A model generated the notes under the pieces. That model did not search any database and was not told the origin of the DNA. It was given only the letters and a program-made list of their open reading frames with translations. From Blastocladiella emersonii ATCC 22665 (lineage: Eukaryota > Fungi > Blastocladiomycota), in NCBI GenBank assembly GCA_025594325.1, contig JANHCV010000006.1, positions 1,612,001 through 1,676,000 of the forward strand: 64,000 nucleotides of DNA, written 5' to 3'. Positions 22,508-28,482 of this stretch are shown in pieces. Numbering within the stretch: position 1 is the stretch's first letter; the number at the start of each line of letters is the position of its first letter. The position numbers and the translations under genes were made by a program.

Positions 22508-25500
22508 TCAGTTCATAAACTTGCGGCACCGGGGCGCGCCGCAGTAGCAGGGCAGCCGCTTCTCGGCGGCCTCCTCGAGCTGGAACTTGTAGTCGTACGT
22601 GAGCTCCTCGCCGGCCTCGACGCGGCGCGCCGCGTAGATGATGACGCGCTTGACGCCGTCGAGGGGCGCGACGATGCGCGCGTAGCAGTTGGGCTCGCAG
22701 CTGTGGTTAATGAACCGGGCCGCGTTCCCCTTGTGCGTGGCGTCGAGGATGCGGTCGTGCGCGATGGCGAAGAAATAGGTCCCGACGCCGTGGCGGTCGT
22801 TGACGAGCTCACGCGTGTCGGCGACCTTCTGGCCAATCACCTCGCCGAGGTACTCGATGACCATGTCGTTGGCCGCGAAGGCGCGCGCCGCGAACAGGCC
22901 GATCCCCTGGATCTTGGATGGGCGGACCGCGATGTTGCCCTTCTCCTGCTCCTTGAGCTTGGCGTACTGCAGCGGCAAGGGCACCGCCGACTCCCACGGC
23001 TGCGCGACCGCCGCGGTAGGCGGCGCGCCCGTCGACGCCGTGGCGACAGGGGCCGCCGTCGTCGGCACGGGCGCCGCCGCCGCATTGGCCGTGAACGGGA
23101 GCGCCGCGTCGGTGCTGCGCGGGTGCGTCGTCGTCGGCGACGTGAGCCCGGCGCCGCCGCCCACGGCGCTGATACTCCGAACACGCGCGCCCGTCACCGC
23201 CGCACCACCACCGGCCGCCGCCGCCGCCGCAAGGGCCGCGCGCTGTCGGATCCGCGGCGAGATAATCGCGGGGTCGGTCCGCGAACTCCCGCGGCGCAGG
23301 GTCCGCTCGGCCTCGCGGATCTGGTTGAGCGCGGCGGGGTCGACGAACCGGAACGGGTACGCGGTGCACTGGGCGGCGTGGGGGAGGTTCTCGATGAACC
23401 GCACGATCGTCGGGTGGTGGAGGAGGACGAGCGACTCGGGGCGGCGCAGGTAGTGGTGGTTGACGGCGATCGGGTACGGCGCGGCGTCGAACCGCTCGAG
23501 GAGCGCGGGGAGGATCTCGGCCGTATGCGCGACCTCAAACGTGCCGGCGGGGTCGTCGGCGACGTGCACGCGCCAGCGGAGCGTCGCGGCGCGGTCGGCG
23601 TCGACAGAGTACCGGTCGACGACCATGGTGTCGGGCGTCTCCTCGCCCTGCACGACGATGCCCTCGTCAACGGGCTCGACCTGCATCGCGGCGGACCCGG
23701 TCATGTCCGAGAAATGCGACGCAGCGTCGACCACGAGCGGGCCGGCGGGCGCGGGGTCGTCGTCGGCGACATCCCCCGCGATCGTGCGCGTCATGGTCAG
23801 GAACGTGGTGGCGCCGGGCACGCGGTAGCTCCAGAACCGCCGCACCACCGTGTACCCGACGGGGATGATGCACGGCGGGCTGAGCGGCGGCGGCGGGGCG
23901 GCCGCCTCGGCAGCCGCAGCAGCAGCCGCGTTACCGTCGGCGCCGGGCTCCGTGTCCGTGGGCGACACGCCGTCGGCACCCGCCGCACCCGCCGCGGCGA
24001 CGAGTAGCGGTGCGGGCGCGATCGGGGCCTCGATGAGGAGGTTCGGGTCGTCGAACGGGAGGCGGCCGATATGCGTGACCGCCGCGCCACCGACGACGAG
24101 GCACGCGGGGTTATACGGCGGGGCCGTCGTCAGCAGCTTCCCGGGCCGGGCGGCGGGTACGGCCGAGACGTAGAGCGGGACGGTCGGGTCGTGCGCGATC
24201 GCGAGGCGCATGGCGCAGACCTGCTCGCACTCGGTGAACTGGGGCTGGAAGTAGGTGGCCCCACCCTTATTCCCGCCGGGCGCCGCGTGGGTCGCGCACC
24301 GGAACTGCTTCTGGAGGACGTCGAGGTGCACCTTGCGCGCGCGCTTGATCTCGGCGGGGGTCCCCGCGGGGTCCGCGAGCCCGGCGATCGACGGCGCGAA
24401 CAGGGCGCGGATCAGGCACGACCAGTGGTACGCGGTCGAGCACGCGCCGCTGGCGGCGCCGCAGTGCAGGTTGGCGAAGGGGAGCTTGCACAGGCCGCAC
24501 CGCCGCGCGCGGCTGTACTCGAGCACCCCCAGGAGGTACGTCTCGTCGACGGGGGTCTCGGTGGCGGCGCCCTCGGGCAGCGACCAGTACGCGCACCCGA
24601 TGTGGCCCCACAGGCCGAGCCCGAGCCCCTCGGGGTCGTTCCCGCCGAGAAACACGAGCCGCCCGACACCCGCGTGCTTGTGCAATTCGTCCTGCGCGCA
24701 GAACGCGCACCGCCGGTGGTCGACGTACACCGCGAGCGCCGTCTGCGCGTCCGACGGCGGGAGCGAGTCGGTGGCGACGGCGGGCGTGGCTGCCGGAGCC
24801 GCCGAGGCCGTTGACGCCGACGAGTCGAGCGACGCGCCGGCGGCCGCGTGGTCGAGGCCGTCGAGCTGGAGGGCGCCGACGCCCGTGGTCGCCGCCGAGA
24901 CGAGGCCGGCCGCGACCGCCGCGGCAGCGGTAGCAGCGGACGACGACGCCGCGCCCTCGCCGGACCGCGTTCGCCGGGCGTGCGGGGGCGGGACGTCGGG
25001 TGCGCCGCCGGCGGGGACCGCGGGGAGGAGGAGCGGGAGCGGTGCGGGCGACCCGTGGGGCGAGCGGCAGTTGGGGCAGACGTACTCGGCGTTGGAGTCG
25101 TGGAGGTCGTCGTACTGGATGTTCTGGAGGATCGGGTCGCACGTCTTGTGGACCCACTTGCTGCACTTGCCGTCGCACCCGACCATGGGCGTCTCGAAGT
25201 CGTCCTCGGAGTAGGCCTTGTAGCACACGGGGCAGAAGTTGCCCGCGTCGTAGTAGGTGGTGCAGAGCTGGCACTGGTACGCGTTGTGGACCGGGTGCCG
25301 GGTCCAGAGCGGCGGGCCGACGACCTGGGACCCGCGCGGCTTGAGCCCGCACGAGTAGCACGACGCGCAGTCGTTGCAGATGATGGTGCCGTCGGCGGCG
25401 ACCATGTCGGGGGAGACGTTGACGCAGTCGAGGTGGAACACGCGGTCGCACGCCGAGCACAGCGCGAGCTGGTCGCGCGGCGAGTTCTTGCTGCACTTGG

Positions 25501-26999
25501 AGCAGAAGGTGCAGAAGATGCAGATCCACGCGTCGCCCGGGTTGGCGGGCGGCGGGCAGATGTACAGCGGCGTGCACGCGTGGTGGTGCGCCTCGGCGCA
25601 CGAGTTGCACGTCAGGTACGAGTCGCCCGGGTGCAGCACCGCCGAGCAGTCGACGCACGACACGGTGGACCGGAACACGAGCGGGTCGGGCTGCTTGGAG
25701 TCGGTGGTCAGCGGGAACACGACGACCGAGGGGGTCGGGATCGGCTCCTCGGACGGGACCGCCGCGGCGCCGAGGTGGTGGTGGTGGTGCGCCGCGAGGG
25801 CGTCCGTCGAGCCCGCCGCGCCGTTGAGTGCGGCACCGGAAGTGAGCGGCGCGCCCGAGGGACTGCCGCCGAGGTAGTTCCCGTTCTTGCCCGCGGCCGC
25901 GCTGCCGCCGCCGCGGCCCGACGCGTCGTGCGAGTCGGAGCTGAAGTCGTCGAGGTTGGCGTTACTCGCAGCGGCACGTGCTTTCTTCGCGGGCGGGCCG
26001 GCGGCCTGGCCGCCCTGTGCACCGGCGTTGGCGGATCCACGTCGACCGGCGGAACTGCCGCCACTACCCGCGGTCTTGCGGTTACGGCTGCGTCCAGTGG
26101 CCGAGCTCTCGGTGAAGTCGCCGTCGCGCTCATCGTCGACCCAGCCCTCCTGGCCGGCGAGCTCGACCATCTGCTGGAACCGCGACTGGCGGGGCTGCTT
26201 GCCGAGCTCGGACGACGACGGGTCGTCCTCCTCCTCGGGGTACCCGTACGCGTCGTGGTGGTGGTGGTGGTGGTGGTGGTGGTGCGGGTGCTGGTAGTGG
26301 TGGTAGTGGCCGTTGCTGTCGTCCTCGGCGTAGTGCTGGTGCTGGTGCTGGTGGTGAGCCCCGTGCGCGTGCGGGTCGGAGTTGTACATGTACGCGGCGG
26401 CCGCAGCGGGATCGTGCTCCTCGCCGTGATGGTGGTGACCGTGGCTGTACTCGCCCGCACCGGCGGCGGTGCCAGCGGGGTAGTCCTCCGAGTACTCTGC
26501 GTAGTTGGGCTGCGGGCGCGATGCGCCGGACCGAGCGCCGCGGGTGGTGACGCCGACGGACGTGTCCATCTGGTCGTCGACGTCGGCGGGGTCGACGAGG
26601 CCGGCAGCGACGGCGGCGGCGTCGCGCATCTCGGTGAACTGGCGGCGGATGGCGTCGAGGGTGCGCGACGGGTCCGAGGCGAGGCGCGCGCGGATCCACC
26701 CGGACACGGTCGAGGACGAGTCACGGCCGCGCTTGCGGACGTCTAGATGGGGGATGCGGGGGTCAGTGGTTGTCCTCGGGTGTGTCAGTAGCAGCGGACG
26801 CACCAGAGCACCACGCGCTGAGCGACTGGTACGTGGACTGGAGGTAGTCGGGGATATCGCCGGGCTCGCCCGTGTAGAGGTCGCCGTTGGCCATGAGCGT
26901 GGCGTAGTGCTCGTCAAAGACGATCTGCTCGCCGGGCTGCAGCAGCTGCGACTCGACAAGGTGCGCGAGCGACACGCGCTGGGGGGCCTTGGGCGCCAT
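22508..26999 (-). CDS. Trithorax/MLL(KMT2A)-like H3K4 methyltransferase, ~1476 aa: RAMA-like, PHD x3, ePHD, FYRN/FYRC, Win-like, SET, post-SET
   Basis: ATG at 26999, intron 26803-26743, then ORF to TGA at 22508. PHD3 reads GNFCPVCYKAYSEDDFETPMVGCD. FYRN reads IIPVGYTVVRRFWSY. SET reads ARFINHSCEPNC...ELTYDY, and post-SET reads CYCGAPRCRKFMN. Confidence 0.92.
26255..26284 (-). repeat. (CAC)10 microsatellite encoding poly-His in the Trx-like gene
   Basis: Ten perfect GTG copies on the + strand; the protein reads HPHHHHHHHHHHDAY. Confidence 0.9.
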
Positions 27000-27258: not shown

Positions 27259-28482
27259 ATGACAGCCGATGCAGTGGACCCAAGGCCGCCGCCGTACCTC
27301 ATGGAGCTGTGCCCAAACACGCAGACGGTCCACTTCTGCGTCTCCATCACCACCGCCAACGCCGACAGCCCATTAGAAACCACTACGGCCGTCGCCGTCC
27401 CCACGAGCGACCACGGCCTCGGCGCGGGCGTCGCCGTCCCCGTCGCCGGTCTCCTCCTGACGCCGCTCGAGATCGTCGTGTCGGGCGCATCGTACAAGTT
27501 CCCCTCCCCCGTCGAACCTCGCTCTCTGTCAGCACACATGGTGGGTCGCGACCTGGTCGTGCGGTGCAAGCTGCGCCACGTCGCGGGGACCCGCCCGTCG
27601 ACGCAGCTGCGGCACCAGCACTTTGACGCGACGCCGCTGCTCCTCGCAGACACGGTCGCCAAGAGCTCGGCGATCCGGTGCGCGGGCTGCCGTGCGGCGT
27701 TGTTGACCTCGCCACCCGCCTCGGTGCGCGCGCTGCCGTCGTCGACGTGGCACGACCTCGTCGAGTGCTGGGCGTGCCACGAGCAGCACGTGGTGATGCC
27801 GACGTCCGGGCACGTCGCGGTCGCGCGGGATGCGTGTTGGGTCGGGCCGTCGGTGCTCGTCGTCCACGGTGACGCGCTTTTGGCGGGATCCGTCAAGTGG
27901 ACGGCGGCCCCGCACGTGCGCGACCCGAACGCGCTGACGCTGGACCGGACGGGCGTCACGACCGTCGCGCAGTGCGCCGTGTGCAGCGCCGTTGTCGGGT
28001 ACCTCCCGCGCGCGACGCCCGCGGACGGCGTGCACCTGTACAAGACGCGGGTCCTCGCCGCTCGCTCTACATCTCCCGACGCCGAGGAGTGGACGTGGAA
28101 CCTCGCCAAGGTGCACCAGGCGTCGCTCATGGCCGAGCTGCTGGACCACGTCACGTCGCACGCCGCGCACCGTGTGACGCTGGTTTCCGCGACGCCGTCC
28201 TCGCCCGATCATCCGGCGGGCACGCCGTTCGCCGTGGTGTGGACCGTCAACTGGAACTGCCGCGTCCGCACGCGCCGGCTCGCGTCGTCGCGCGCACTCA
28301 AGGTGCTGTACCGAACGCTCACGCCGGACGAGACCACGGCGGGGGCGCAGGCGACGGTCGCGGTCGCGGACCCGGCGGGCCTCCTCGCCGTCCTAGCCGG
28401 GACGACGGCGCAGCTGCCCACGTCGCAGCAGTCGGTCGAGATTAAGGGCGAGGCGTGGCGGACGACGTATCTCATGTCATAA
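27259..28482 (+). CDS. UBE3D/HECT_2-like E2-binding ubiquitin ligase
   Basis: CAGC...LPSSTWHDLVECWACHE...CAVC...HLYK matches the HECT_2 family pattern LPSxxWxExxxxWxCH. Confidence 0.65.
   Translation: MTADAVDPRPPPYLMELCPNTQTVHFCVSITTANADSPLETTTAVAVPTSDHGLGAGVAVPVAGLLLTPLEIVVSGASYKFPSPVEPRSLSAHMVGRDLVVRCKLRHVAGTRPSTQLRHQHFDATPLLLADTVAKSSAIRCAGCRAALLTSPPASVRALPSSTWHDLVECWACHEQHVVMPTSGHVAVARDACWVGPSVLVVHGDALLAGSVKWTAAPHVRDPNALTLDRTGVTTVAQCAVCSAVVGYLPRATPADGVHLYKTRVLAARSTSPDAEEWTWNLAKVHQASLMAELLDHVTSHAAHRVTLVSATPSSPDHPAGTPFAVVWTVNWNCRVRTRRLASSRALKVLYRTLTPDETTAGAQATVAVADPAGLLAVLAGTTAQLPTSQQSVEIKGEAWRTTYLMS

What the first reader, a model, noticed from the sequence alone, without database searches (positions are those of the whole stretch)
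26680..26999. RAMA-like domain fused to the N-terminus of a Trithorax/MLL-type H3K4 methyltransferase
Seen in sequence: after splicing intron 26803-26743, the protein starts MAPKAPQRVSLAHLVESQLLQPGEQIVFDEHYATLMANGDLYTGEPGDIPDYLQSTYQSLSAWCSDVRKRGRDSSSTVSGWIRARL. The ORF track shows neither frame intact. From memory this follows the RAMA pattern of MPND (L..L....LL.PG...(a).l..dG.i....f.S.SAW......sGW). Established: RAMA domains were proposed as modified-DNA (N6-methyladenine) readers, many early-diverging fungi carry abundant 6mA at active genes, and animal MLL1 uses an N-terminal CXXC domain to read DNA. Inference: here RAMA may be the DNA-state reader that couples 6mA or unmodified DNA to H3K4 methylation.
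Basis: partly seen in the sequence, partly recalled or inferred. Interest (0 to 1): 0.78.

Follow-up and report, generated by a model that had tools for sequence, protein, structure and literature searches.

The report
RAMA DNA-binding domain on fungal Trithorax
The water fungus Blastocladiella emersonii has a Trithorax/MLL-type histone H3K4 methyltransferase that starts with a genuine RAMA domain, a DNA-binding module of bacterial restriction-system origin. This makes it a candidate link between DNA state and histone methylation, but published work reports little adenine methylation in this fungal group.

Summary
On the minus strand, exon 1 (26999-26804), a 61-nt GT..AG intron (26803-26743) and exon 2 (26742-22508) encode the public 1476-aa model H9P43_005863 of Blastocladiella emersonii.

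- **RAMA domain.** Residues 1-120 pass Pfam's RAMA threshold (35.5 bits against 35.2). An AlphaFold model matches only the two solved RAMA domains: MPND at Z 11.6 and CcrM at Z 10.0. The next best match is at Z 5.2. The three DNA-contact residues of MPND align to invariant S59, S61 and W81.
- **Rest of the protein.** It has PHD fingers, sub-threshold FYRN and FYRC matches, a Win-like motif, and a canonical SET plus post-SET closest to KMT2A.
- **Distribution.** The fusion, with the same phase-1 intron inside RAMA, is in all four sampled genera of Blastocladiomycota. Related RAMA-PHD-ePHD-FYRN-SET proteins occur in Mortierellomycota, Dimargaritales and Endogonales, one as a single uninterrupted ORF.

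The 6mA-reader interpretation is only partly supported. No run on record as RNA was listed. RAMA's 6mA selectivity is disputed in vitro. Published work reports low 6mA in Blastocladiomycota and no MTA1 complex in two of its genera. The most likely role is a DNA or nucleosome tether in place of CXXC. RAMA+SET architectures were already noted generically in 2015, so I class this as a new member of a known kind. The scan also holds an unchecked RAMA note elsewhere in this genome.

The parts
26804..26999 (-). Exon 1: Met1-Ser65 plus the first base of codon 66. It encodes the N-terminal about 60% of the RAMA domain, including the S59-L-S61-A-W63 motif (codons 26825-26811).
   Evidence: Exon 1 alone gives Pfam RAMA 24.7 bits.
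26743..26803 (-). A 61-nt phase-1 GT..AG intron that splits the Asp66 codon inside the RAMA domain.
   Evidence: The same phase-1 position, after (S/A)WC[STG], is found in Allomyces, Catenaria and Sorochytrium. There is no RNA evidence.
26606..26742 (-). Start of exon 2: the C-terminal part of RAMA (residues 66-111). It holds the basic loop R68-K-R-G-R72, G80-W81 (W81 = 26698-26696) and the C-terminal helix.
   Evidence: Adding this part raises the Pfam score from 24.7 to 35.5 bits.
25540..26605 (-). Poorly conserved low-complexity linker (about residues 112-466). It is acidic and His-rich at residues 111-290 (31 D/E, 27 His) and Gly/Ala/Ser-rich after that.
   Evidence: Conservation is 0.09-0.31 across residues 91-390 and rises after residue 390, against 0.40-0.66 in RAMA.
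25367..25504 (-). Best-scoring PHD finger of a cluster of three (P0001 residues 479-524).
   Evidence: PHD 36.6 bits, 3 stretches. The region is conserved at 0.53-0.77.
23801..23875 (-). FYRN-like segment (P0001 residues 1022-1046).
   Evidence: 21.0 bits against a cutoff of 24, so below threshold. Orthologue conservation over residues 1021-1050 is 0.61.
23345..23434 (-). FYRC-like segment (P0001 residues 1169-1198).
   Evidence: 20.9 bits against a cutoff of 21. Conservation is 0.66-0.72.
23273..23290 (-). Win-like motif GSSRTD (P0001 residues 1217-1222), a possible WDR5-binding arginine motif.
   Evidence: The pattern G[SAC][SA]RTD is matched in four blastoclad proteins, and the truncated Catenaria model ends ...RRGSSRT. 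Reading it as a Win motif is inference from the MLL1 motif as I recall it.
22508..22906 (-). SET domain (22586-22906), post-SET CYCGAPRCRKFMN and the stop codon (22508-22510).
   Evidence: SET 84.1 bits; best PDB match KMT2A, 171.6 bits. FINHSCEPN, ELTYDY and post-SET are all present.

Best explanation
The region is the 5' end of the Blastocladiella emersonii Trithorax/MLL-type (KMT2-like) histone methyltransferase gene. Its first about 110 residues, split by one small intron, form a bona fide RAMA domain.

Shown here:
- The domain is RAMA by profile and by fold.
- It is conserved as strongly as the PHD and FYR-like regions, while the linker behind it is not conserved.
- The fusion is old. It is present throughout the sampled Blastocladiomycota, and related proteins occur in three other early-diverging fungal lineages.

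Inferred mechanism:
- RAMA binds the sugar-phosphate backbone of double-stranded DNA. It would do so through the conserved Ser-x-Ser-Ala-Trp and Gly-Trp elements and the basic RKRGR loop, as MPND's RAMA does.
- This would tether a COMPASS-like H3K4 methyltransferase to linker or nucleosomal DNA. It would take the place of the CXXC domain and AT-hooks of animal MLL1/2, which this protein lacks.
- The acidic and His-rich tract that follows may modulate binding, as the acidic region next to MPND's RAMA does.
- Discrimination of N6-methyladenine is possible, but it is neither shown nor needed for this model.
For: Gene model:
- Searches support the exon-intron structure and its identity to the NCBI model.

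RAMA membership:
- Pfam gives 35.5 bits for B. emersonii and 32-48 bits for the four orthologues.
- A profile of the five orthologues has MPND (7ydt) as its best PDB hit (E 0.011, profile positions 6-87 against chain 62-141).
- The AlphaFold2 model has pLDDT 83.6.
- Foldseek's only hits below E 0.01 are MPND and the CcrM C-terminal domain.
- VIA-align gives Z 11.6, 11.4 and 10.0, with the next match at 5.2.
- Nine of ten ESM-Atlas structural rows are RAMA clusters.

DNA-contact residues:
- MPND S113, S115 and W135 contact the DNA backbone, and alanine mutants lose binding (PMC9963953).
- In the alignment they fall on S59, S61 and W81. S61 and W81 are invariant in 29 sequences. S59 is invariant in the five blastoclad sequences and Ser or Thr in nearly all of the 29.

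Selection:
- Conservation is 0.40-0.66 in RAMA against 0.09-0.31 in the linker.

Age of the fusion:
- The identical phase-1 intron is in four genera.
- RAMA-PHD-ePHD-FYRN-SET proteins occur in Dimargaris, Dispira, Tieghemiomyces, Jimgerdemannia and Mortierellomycota.
- The Tieghemiomyces gene is one uninterrupted ORF of 1976 codons.

Enzyme body:
- The SET domain is closest to KMT2A and the catalytic motifs are intact.
- Pfam finds no CXXC.
Against: - There is no direct evidence that this domain binds DNA.
- The B. emersonii domain is not basic overall (12 K/R against 14 D/E, pI 5.6), although its relatives are (pI about 9).
- The MPND-DNA interface in the crystal is small and weak, and MPND's RAMA also binds histones directly (PMC9963953). 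A protein or nucleosome contact is therefore equally conceivable.
- No run on record as RNA was listed, so the splice and the start codon rest on comparison alone.
- The Pfam score exceeds the cutoff by only 0.3 bits for this species.
Confidence: 0.6

Rival explanations
1. The RAMA domain is a selective reader of N6-methyladenine, or of its absence, and recruits the H3K4 methyltransferase to 6mA-marked gene starts. This would couple the two active marks.
For: - RAMA was defined by its association with N6A methylases and restriction enzymes, and was predicted to discriminate m6A (PMC4738411).
- The MPND RAMA bound 6mA-containing duplex selectively in a pull-down (PMC6591016).
- 6mA and H3K4me3 co-localise in an early-diverging fungus (PMC12019607, abstract).
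- A 2026 review says no fungal 6mA reader is known (PMC13297926).
- Relatives of this protein occur in phyla reported as 6mA-rich, namely Mortierellomycota and Kickxellomycota (PMC11258239).
- Unchecked scan notes mention a Dam-like methylase and a second RAMA protein in this genome.
Against: - Blastocladiomycota show reduced 6mA (<0.3%). Catenaria has little or no ApT methylation. Catenaria and Allomyces lack Mta1/Mta9. Yet RAMA is well conserved in exactly these genera.
- In EMSA and MST, 6mA did not affect MPND binding, and no base contacts were seen.
- MYSM1's RAMA was not 6mA-selective.
- No residue signature for 6mA recognition in RAMA is known, so nothing in the sequence can be tested for it.
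Confidence: 0.2
2. The RAMA domain works mainly as a histone, nucleosome or protein-interaction module rather than as a DNA binder.
For: - MPND's RAMA region binds histones directly, and DNA plus the flanking acidic regions enhance this (PMC9963953 abstract).
- The B. emersonii domain is mildly acidic and is followed by an acidic and His-rich tract.
Against: - The residues that are invariant across the fungal family are those that contact DNA in MPND.
- The CcrM homologue of the domain is in a DNA complex (6pbd).
Confidence: 0.14
3. Gene-model artefact. Exon 1 is not part of the SET gene. It would be a separate small gene, a pseudo-exon, or have a wrong start, and the apparent fusion would come from prediction software.
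For: - No run on record as RNA was listed.
- The GC-rich genome produces many long spurious ORFs.
Against: - The RAMA domain itself spans the intron. Exon 1 alone gives a truncated domain of 24.7 bits, and adding the start of exon 2 completes it at 35.5 bits.
- The intron has canonical ends and the same phase and position in four genera.
- A related fungal gene has RAMA and SET in one uninterrupted ORF.
Confidence: 0.03

Closest known systems
MPND (MPN domain-containing protein, mouse/human): RAMA domain, PDB 7ydt / 7ydw
   Same: - Same fold: Z 11.4-11.6, rmsd 2.0 A over 85-86 residues, 22-25% identity.
- Same Ser-x-Ser-Ala-Trp and Gly-Trp DNA-contact elements.
- The domain sits near the N-terminus of a chromatin enzyme and is followed by an acidic tract.
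   Different: - MPND couples RAMA to a JAB/MPN deubiquitinase-like domain, not to a SET methyltransferase.
- Sequence identity is low.
- This domain is interrupted by an intron and is less basic.
CcrM C-terminal domain (Caulobacter N6-adenine methyltransferase, PDB 6pbd)
   Same: RAMA fold (Z 10.0, 87 residues aligned). It is a DNA-binding accessory domain fused to an enzyme that acts on DNA or chromatin.
   Different: It is bacterial, C-terminal, and serves a DNA methyltransferase. Here the partner enzyme methylates a histone.
Animal Trithorax / MLL1-MLL2 (KMT2A/B)
   Same: - The SET plus post-SET is most similar to KMT2A and KMT2B (171.6 and 161 bits).
- Multiple PHD fingers, ePHD in the orthologues, FYRN- and FYRC-like segments, and a Win-like motif, in the same order.
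   Different: - Pfam finds no CXXC domain and no bromodomain.
- FYRN and FYRC are below Pfam cutoffs.
- The N-terminal DNA-binding module is RAMA instead of CXXC and AT-hooks.
- At 1476 aa it is much shorter.
RAMA+SET and RAMA+PHD architectures listed by Iyer, Zhang and Aravind 2015 (PMC4738411)
   Same: That paper already states that RAMA is combined in single eukaryotic polypeptides with the SET domain and PHD fingers, and it predicts a role in reading m6A.
   Different: The text names animals, chlorophytes, stramenopiles, rhodophytes and giant viruses as RAMA-bearing lineages, not fungi. It does not describe a Trithorax-type enzyme. Its Figure 4 and supplement were not readable here.

Membership tests
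RAMA domain (Pfam PF18755) | Profile-HMM score at or above Pfam's gathering threshold | tested here: met
   P0001:1-120 scores 35.5 bits against a cutoff of 35.2 (E 1e-8). Allomyces scores 47.5 and 48.5, Catenaria 43.3, and Sorochytrium 32.3, just below the cutoff. The margin for this species is thin.
RAMA domain (Pfam PF18755) | Fold of the solved RAMA domains (MPND, CcrM C-terminal domain) | tested here: met
   The model has pLDDT 83.6. Foldseek gives TM 0.71-0.75 normalised by the target. VIA gives Z 11.6 and 10.0, with the next unrelated fold at 5.2. Nine of ten Atlas rows are RAMA clusters.
RAMA domain (Pfam PF18755) | Conserved DNA-backbone contact residues (MPND S113, S115, W135) | tested here: met
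   They align to S59, S61 and W81. S61 and W81 are invariant in 29 sequences, and position 59 is Ser or Thr in nearly all. The residue numbering of the PDB chain was matched with a -1 offset, which also fits R63 and the disordered residues 131-133.
RAMA domain (Pfam PF18755) | Binds double-stranded DNA | not testable with these tools
   Needs EMSA or MST with the recombinant domain.
6mA reader (functional class) | Preferential binding to N6-methyladenine DNA | not testable with these tools
   No sequence signature is known. Published data for MPND conflict.
6mA reader (functional class) | The host carries substantial, patterned 6mA and its writer | tested here: inconclusive
   Literature only. 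Blastocladiomycota show <0.3% 6mA, and Catenaria and Allomyces lack Mta1/Mta9. B. emersonii itself was not reported in the papers found. An unchecked scan note mentions a Dam-like methylase in this genome.
KMT2 / Trithorax-MLL H3K4 methyltransferases | SET domain with NHSC and catalytic Tyr motifs, plus a C-terminal post-SET Cys cluster | tested here: met
   SET scores 84.1 bits. FINHSCEPN, ELTYDY and CYCGAPRCRKFMN are present. PDB matches rank KMT2A, then KMT2B, then KMT2C/D, then Set1.
KMT2 / Trithorax-MLL H3K4 methyltransferases | FYRN and FYRC motifs | tested here: inconclusive
   FYRN scores 21.0 against 24, and FYRC 20.9 against 21. Both are below cutoff, but they are in the right order and conserved among orthologues.
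KMT2 / Trithorax-MLL H3K4 methyltransferases | PHD finger cluster and extended PHD | tested here: met
   PHD scores 36.6 bits in 3 stretches. PF13771 and PF13832 are on record for the orthologues.
MLL1/MLL2 subfamily specifically | CXXC zinc finger that reads unmethylated CpG | tested here: not met
   No CXXC hit, even at E up to 10, in the 1410-residue exon-2 product.
KMT2 / Trithorax-MLL H3K4 methyltransferases | H3K4 specificity and assembly with WDR5/RbBP5/Ash2 | not testable with these tools
   Only a Win-like GSSRTD motif was seen. Its reading as a Win motif is inferred.

The most novel reading that the evidence does not exclude
The RAMA-Trithorax family could be the missing fungal reader of adenine methylation. 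It would be an ancestral module of early-diverging fungi that recruits, or in the lineages with a degenerate SET domain merely docks, H3K4-methylation machinery at 6mA-marked gene starts. In this reading it was not retained in the Dikarya, which have little 6mA, and it was kept for residual or asymmetric 6mA in Blastocladiomycota.
Probability: 0.15. Interest if true: 0.85.

Novelty: new member of a known kind. Interest (0 to 1): 0.5.

Why it matters
How adenine methylation and H3K4 methylation come to mark the same active gene starts in early-diverging fungi is an open question. A 2026 review states that no fungal 6mA reader is known (PMC13297926). A Trithorax-type enzyme that carries a restriction-system DNA-reader domain at its N-terminus is a concrete and testable candidate for that link.

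It also shows that different lineages fitted KMT2 enzymes with different DNA-binding heads: CXXC in animals and RAMA in these fungi. The domain is retained in a phylum reported to have little 6mA and no MTA1 complex. That gives a natural test of whether RAMA needs 6mA at all.

Tried and rejected
- **RNA evidence.** The look-up of sequencing runs listed no run on record as RNA, so read laying was never used and the splice is not confirmed by reads.
- **Word-index searches on the RAMA region.** Searches restricted to the RAMA region of P0001 and of P0025 returned only self or near-identical proteins. They say nothing about distribution.
- **Feature search of the Atlas.** The N-terminus scored only 0.85, which is a lead only.
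- **Literature.** Full-text searches for PF18755, for RAMA+KMT2+fungi, and for Blastocladiella+6mA found nothing. The supplement of Iyer et al. 2015 is not held.
- **Spurious hits set aside.** Nine of the 41 hits of the representative search lack the RAMA motifs. I set them aside as spurious multi-stretch matches to repetitive or unrelated proteins (P0009, P0011, P0012, P0015, P0029, P0039, P0040, P0044, P0045).
- **Orthology with MLL1/2.** I rejected filing the protein as an MLL1/2 orthologue because no CXXC is present.
- **Absence in other fungi.** I did not claim absence of the fusion in Chytridiomycota, Mucorales or Dikarya. The blastoclad-only profile found just 41 proteins, so it is too narrow for such a claim.
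- **Joining the exons.** The public protein P0001 stood in for it.

Full report
**Observation.** An ATG at 26999 opens a 65-codon exon that ends at 26804. A 61-nt intron (26803-26743) begins GTGCGT, ends CTAG and contains two CTGAC branch-like sites. Exon 2 starts at 26742 and completes a split Asp codon (G|AC). It then runs without a stop to 22508. The mechanical ORF list shows why neither frame looks intact. The exon-1 frame stops 14 codons into the intron, and the exon-2 frame only continues upstream in a different frame.

A word-index search with the exon-2 product returned a 100%-identical public protein. It is H9P43_005863 of Blastocladiella emersonii ATCC 22665 (P0001, 1476 aa). tblastn maps it to the two exons at 100% identity.

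**Is it RAMA?**
- Exon 1 alone hits Pfam RAMA (PF18755) at E 2.3e-5 and 24.7 bits, covering profile positions 15-61 of 107.
- With the start of exon 2 (P0001:1-120), the match extends to profile position 103 and reaches 35.5 bits. That is just above the gathering cutoff of 35.2. So the domain spans the intron.
- The orthologues score 32.3 to 48.5 bits.
- A profile of the five blastoclad N-termini has mouse MPND (7ydt) as its best match among all PDB sequences (E 0.011).
- An AlphaFold2 model built on a 29-sequence alignment has mean pLDDT 83.6.
- Foldseek's only matches below E 0.01 are MPND (apo and DNA-bound) and the C-terminal domain of the adenine methyltransferase CcrM.
- VIA-align gives Z 11.6 (rmsd 2.0 A, 86 residues) and Z 11.4 for the two MPND entries, and Z 10.0 for CcrM. 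The next matches are SAND domains at Z 5.2.
- Nine of ten ESM-Atlas structural rows are RAMA-bearing clusters.

Membership in the RAMA family is therefore met by profile, by fold and by motif.

**DNA-contact residues.** In the MPND-DNA crystal structure, S113, S115 and W135 hydrogen-bond to the DNA backbone, and their alanine mutants almost lose binding (PMC9963953). In the alignment these residues fall on S59, S61 and W81 of the Blastocladiella protein. To match the numbering I applied a -1 offset between chain index and residue number. That offset also fits R63 and the disordered residues 131-133.

S61 and W81 are invariant in all 29 aligned sequences. Position 59 is Ser or Thr in nearly all of them, and W63 and G80 are nearly invariant. 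A basic loop (R68-K-R-G-R72) lies between the two motifs. The domain as a whole is not basic in this species (pI 5.6), although it is in most of the relatives checked (pI about 9).

**The rest of the protein.**
- Pfam finds a SET domain (84.1 bits) and three PHD stretches (36.6 bits). It also finds FYRN- and FYRC-like segments just under their cutoffs, and no CXXC.
- The SET region is most similar to KMT2A (171.6 bits), then KMT2B, KMT2C/D and Set1.
- The NHSC motif, the ELTYDY tyrosines and the post-SET cysteine cluster are intact.
- A G[SAC][SA]RTD motif upstream of SET is conserved in the blastoclad proteins. It resembles the WDR5-binding Win motif as I recall it, so this is an inference.

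The body is therefore a Trithorax-like KMT2 enzyme. It is not an MLL1/2 orthologue in the strict sense.

**Is the fusion real and old?** No run on record as RNA was listed, so the evidence is comparative.
- Orthologues with RAMA on record exist in Allomyces arbusculus, A. macrogynus, Catenaria anguillulae and Sorochytrium milnesiophthora.
- In their genomic loci the same phase-1 intron splits the same Asp codon, after (S/A)WC[STG]. All have GT..AG ends, and the lengths are about 60-80 nt.
- Conservation among the genera is 0.40-0.66 in RAMA and 0.53-0.77 in the PHD region. It is 0.66-0.72 in the FYRC-like region and only 0.09-0.31 in the linker. The RAMA domain is therefore under constraint.
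- A profile search of 1.84 billion representative proteins found only 41 hits.
- After I set aside nine spurious multi-stretch matches, the nearest relatives outside Blastocladiomycota are RAMA domains of long fungal proteins with the same order of domains: RAMA, PHD, ePHD, FYRN, SET.
- These come from Dimargaris, Dispira and Tieghemiomyces (Dimargaritales), Jimgerdemannia (Endogonales) and several Mortierellomycota.
- The Tieghemiomyces gene is a single uninterrupted ORF of 1976 codons from RAMA to SET. That shows the physical fusion without any splicing assumption.
- In Linnemannia and Jimgerdemannia the RAMA region lies in one exon, so among the fungi checked only the blastoclad genes have the intron.

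**A difference among the relatives.** In the non-blastoclad proteins the SET domain is degenerate. The NHSC motif and the tyrosine pair are replaced, and the post-SET is missing. Dimargaritales also carry a long insertion in SET. Of the fungal proteins aligned here, only the blastoclad versions combine RAMA with a canonical catalytic SET.

**What does it do?** RAMA was defined from fusions to N6-adenine methylases and restriction nucleases. It was predicted to discriminate m6A, and its eukaryotic fusions to SET and PHD were already listed (PMC4738411).

Experimental data are mixed:
- MPND's RAMA bound 6mA duplex selectively in a pull-down, but MYSM1's RAMA did not (PMC6591016).
- A structural study found that 6mA did not affect MPND binding. 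It also found backbone contacts only, sequence-independent binding, and direct histone binding (PMC9963953).

- Blastocladiomycota show reduced 6mA (<0.3%) (PMC11258239).
- Catenaria has low 6mA with low or no ApT methylation (PMC8298701).
- Catenaria and Allomyces lack Mta1/Mta9, which the authors read as a likely loss in the phylum (PMC12019607).

Yet the RAMA domain is well conserved in exactly these genera. The simplest reading is that RAMA is a general DNA or nucleosome tether for the enzyme, functionally replacing CXXC and AT-hooks. 6mA reading is a less likely option that remains open. Relatives exist in phyla reported as 6mA-rich, and the review literature says that no fungal 6mA reader is known (PMC13297926).

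Two unchecked notes of this scan mention a DEUBAD-RAMA protein and a Dam-like methylase elsewhere in this genome. I could not test either.

**Novelty and verdict.** The gene is in GenBank as a hypothetical protein, and the RAMA hit is already in precomputed Pfam tables. The RAMA+SET combination was noted generically in 2015. I found no paper that describes a RAMA-bearing Trithorax enzyme in fungi or its distribution.

I class it as a new member of a known kind. Interest is moderate, at 0.5.

Noticed in passing
window 27259-28482 (+): The divergently oriented neighbour, about 260 bp upstream of the RAMA-Trx start codon, encodes a HECT_2 / UBE3D-like E2-binding protein (Pfam PF09814, 92 bits). 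The two genes probably share a short bidirectional promoter region.
   Followed up: partly
P0025, P0027, P0030, P0020, P0017 (alignment A3): The RAMA-PHD-ePHD-FYRN-SET proteins of Mortierellomycota, Endogonales and Dimargaritales have degenerate SET domains. The NHSC motif and the catalytic tyrosine pair are replaced, and there is no post-SET. Dimargaritales also have an insertion of about 60-90 residues. They may be inactive readers or scaffolds rather than enzymes.
   Followed up: partly
L005:1001-6931 (+): The Tieghemiomyces parasiticus homologue is one uninterrupted ORF of 1976 codons that holds RAMA, PHD, ePHD, FYRN and SET.
   Followed up: yes
window about 26130-26409 (-), P0001 residues about 111-290: An acidic and histidine-rich tract, including a run of ten His, directly follows the RAMA domain. 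Allomyces and Catenaria have poly-Asp/Glu tracts at the same place. This recalls the acidic region next to MPND's RAMA, which inhibits DNA binding and promotes histone binding (PMC9963953).
   Followed up: partly
L003:3001-7715 (+): The Catenaria anguillulae gene model is split. The 1286-aa 'partial' protein ends at the Win-like motif, and the SET domain is called as a separate 164-aa gene just downstream. The Allomyces macrogynus 'trithorax-like, partial' model (P0003) contains an internal repeat of its PHD region, probably an assembly or model error.
   Followed up: no
ESM Atlas rows: The RAMA model matches a plant IDM1-like cluster that carries Pfam TDBD (PF16135) at TM 0.69. A separate Atlas cluster of about 2034-aa proteins combines SET, TDBD and ePHD. 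TDBD may be a RAMA-like fold, and similar reader-SET fusions may exist outside fungi.
   Followed up: no
P0056 (Saitoella complicata, 775 aa), residues 493-603: A RAMA-like domain (30.6 bits, below the cutoff) occurs in a protein of an early-branching ascomycete that lacks SET. RAMA is therefore not wholly absent from Dikarya.
   Followed up: no
P0013, P0016, P0037 (metagenomic, 354-556 aa): Short RAMA+PHD proteins of unknown origin are among the closest relatives of the fungal RAMA domains. They could be fragments of Trx-like genes or a separate RAMA-PHD reader family.
   Followed up: no
model mb1c82ed75ae4 against PDB: After the RAMA structures, the next structural neighbours are DNA-binding SAND domains (SP140, GMEB1) at Z about 5. 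This is a possible distant fold relationship.
   Followed up: no
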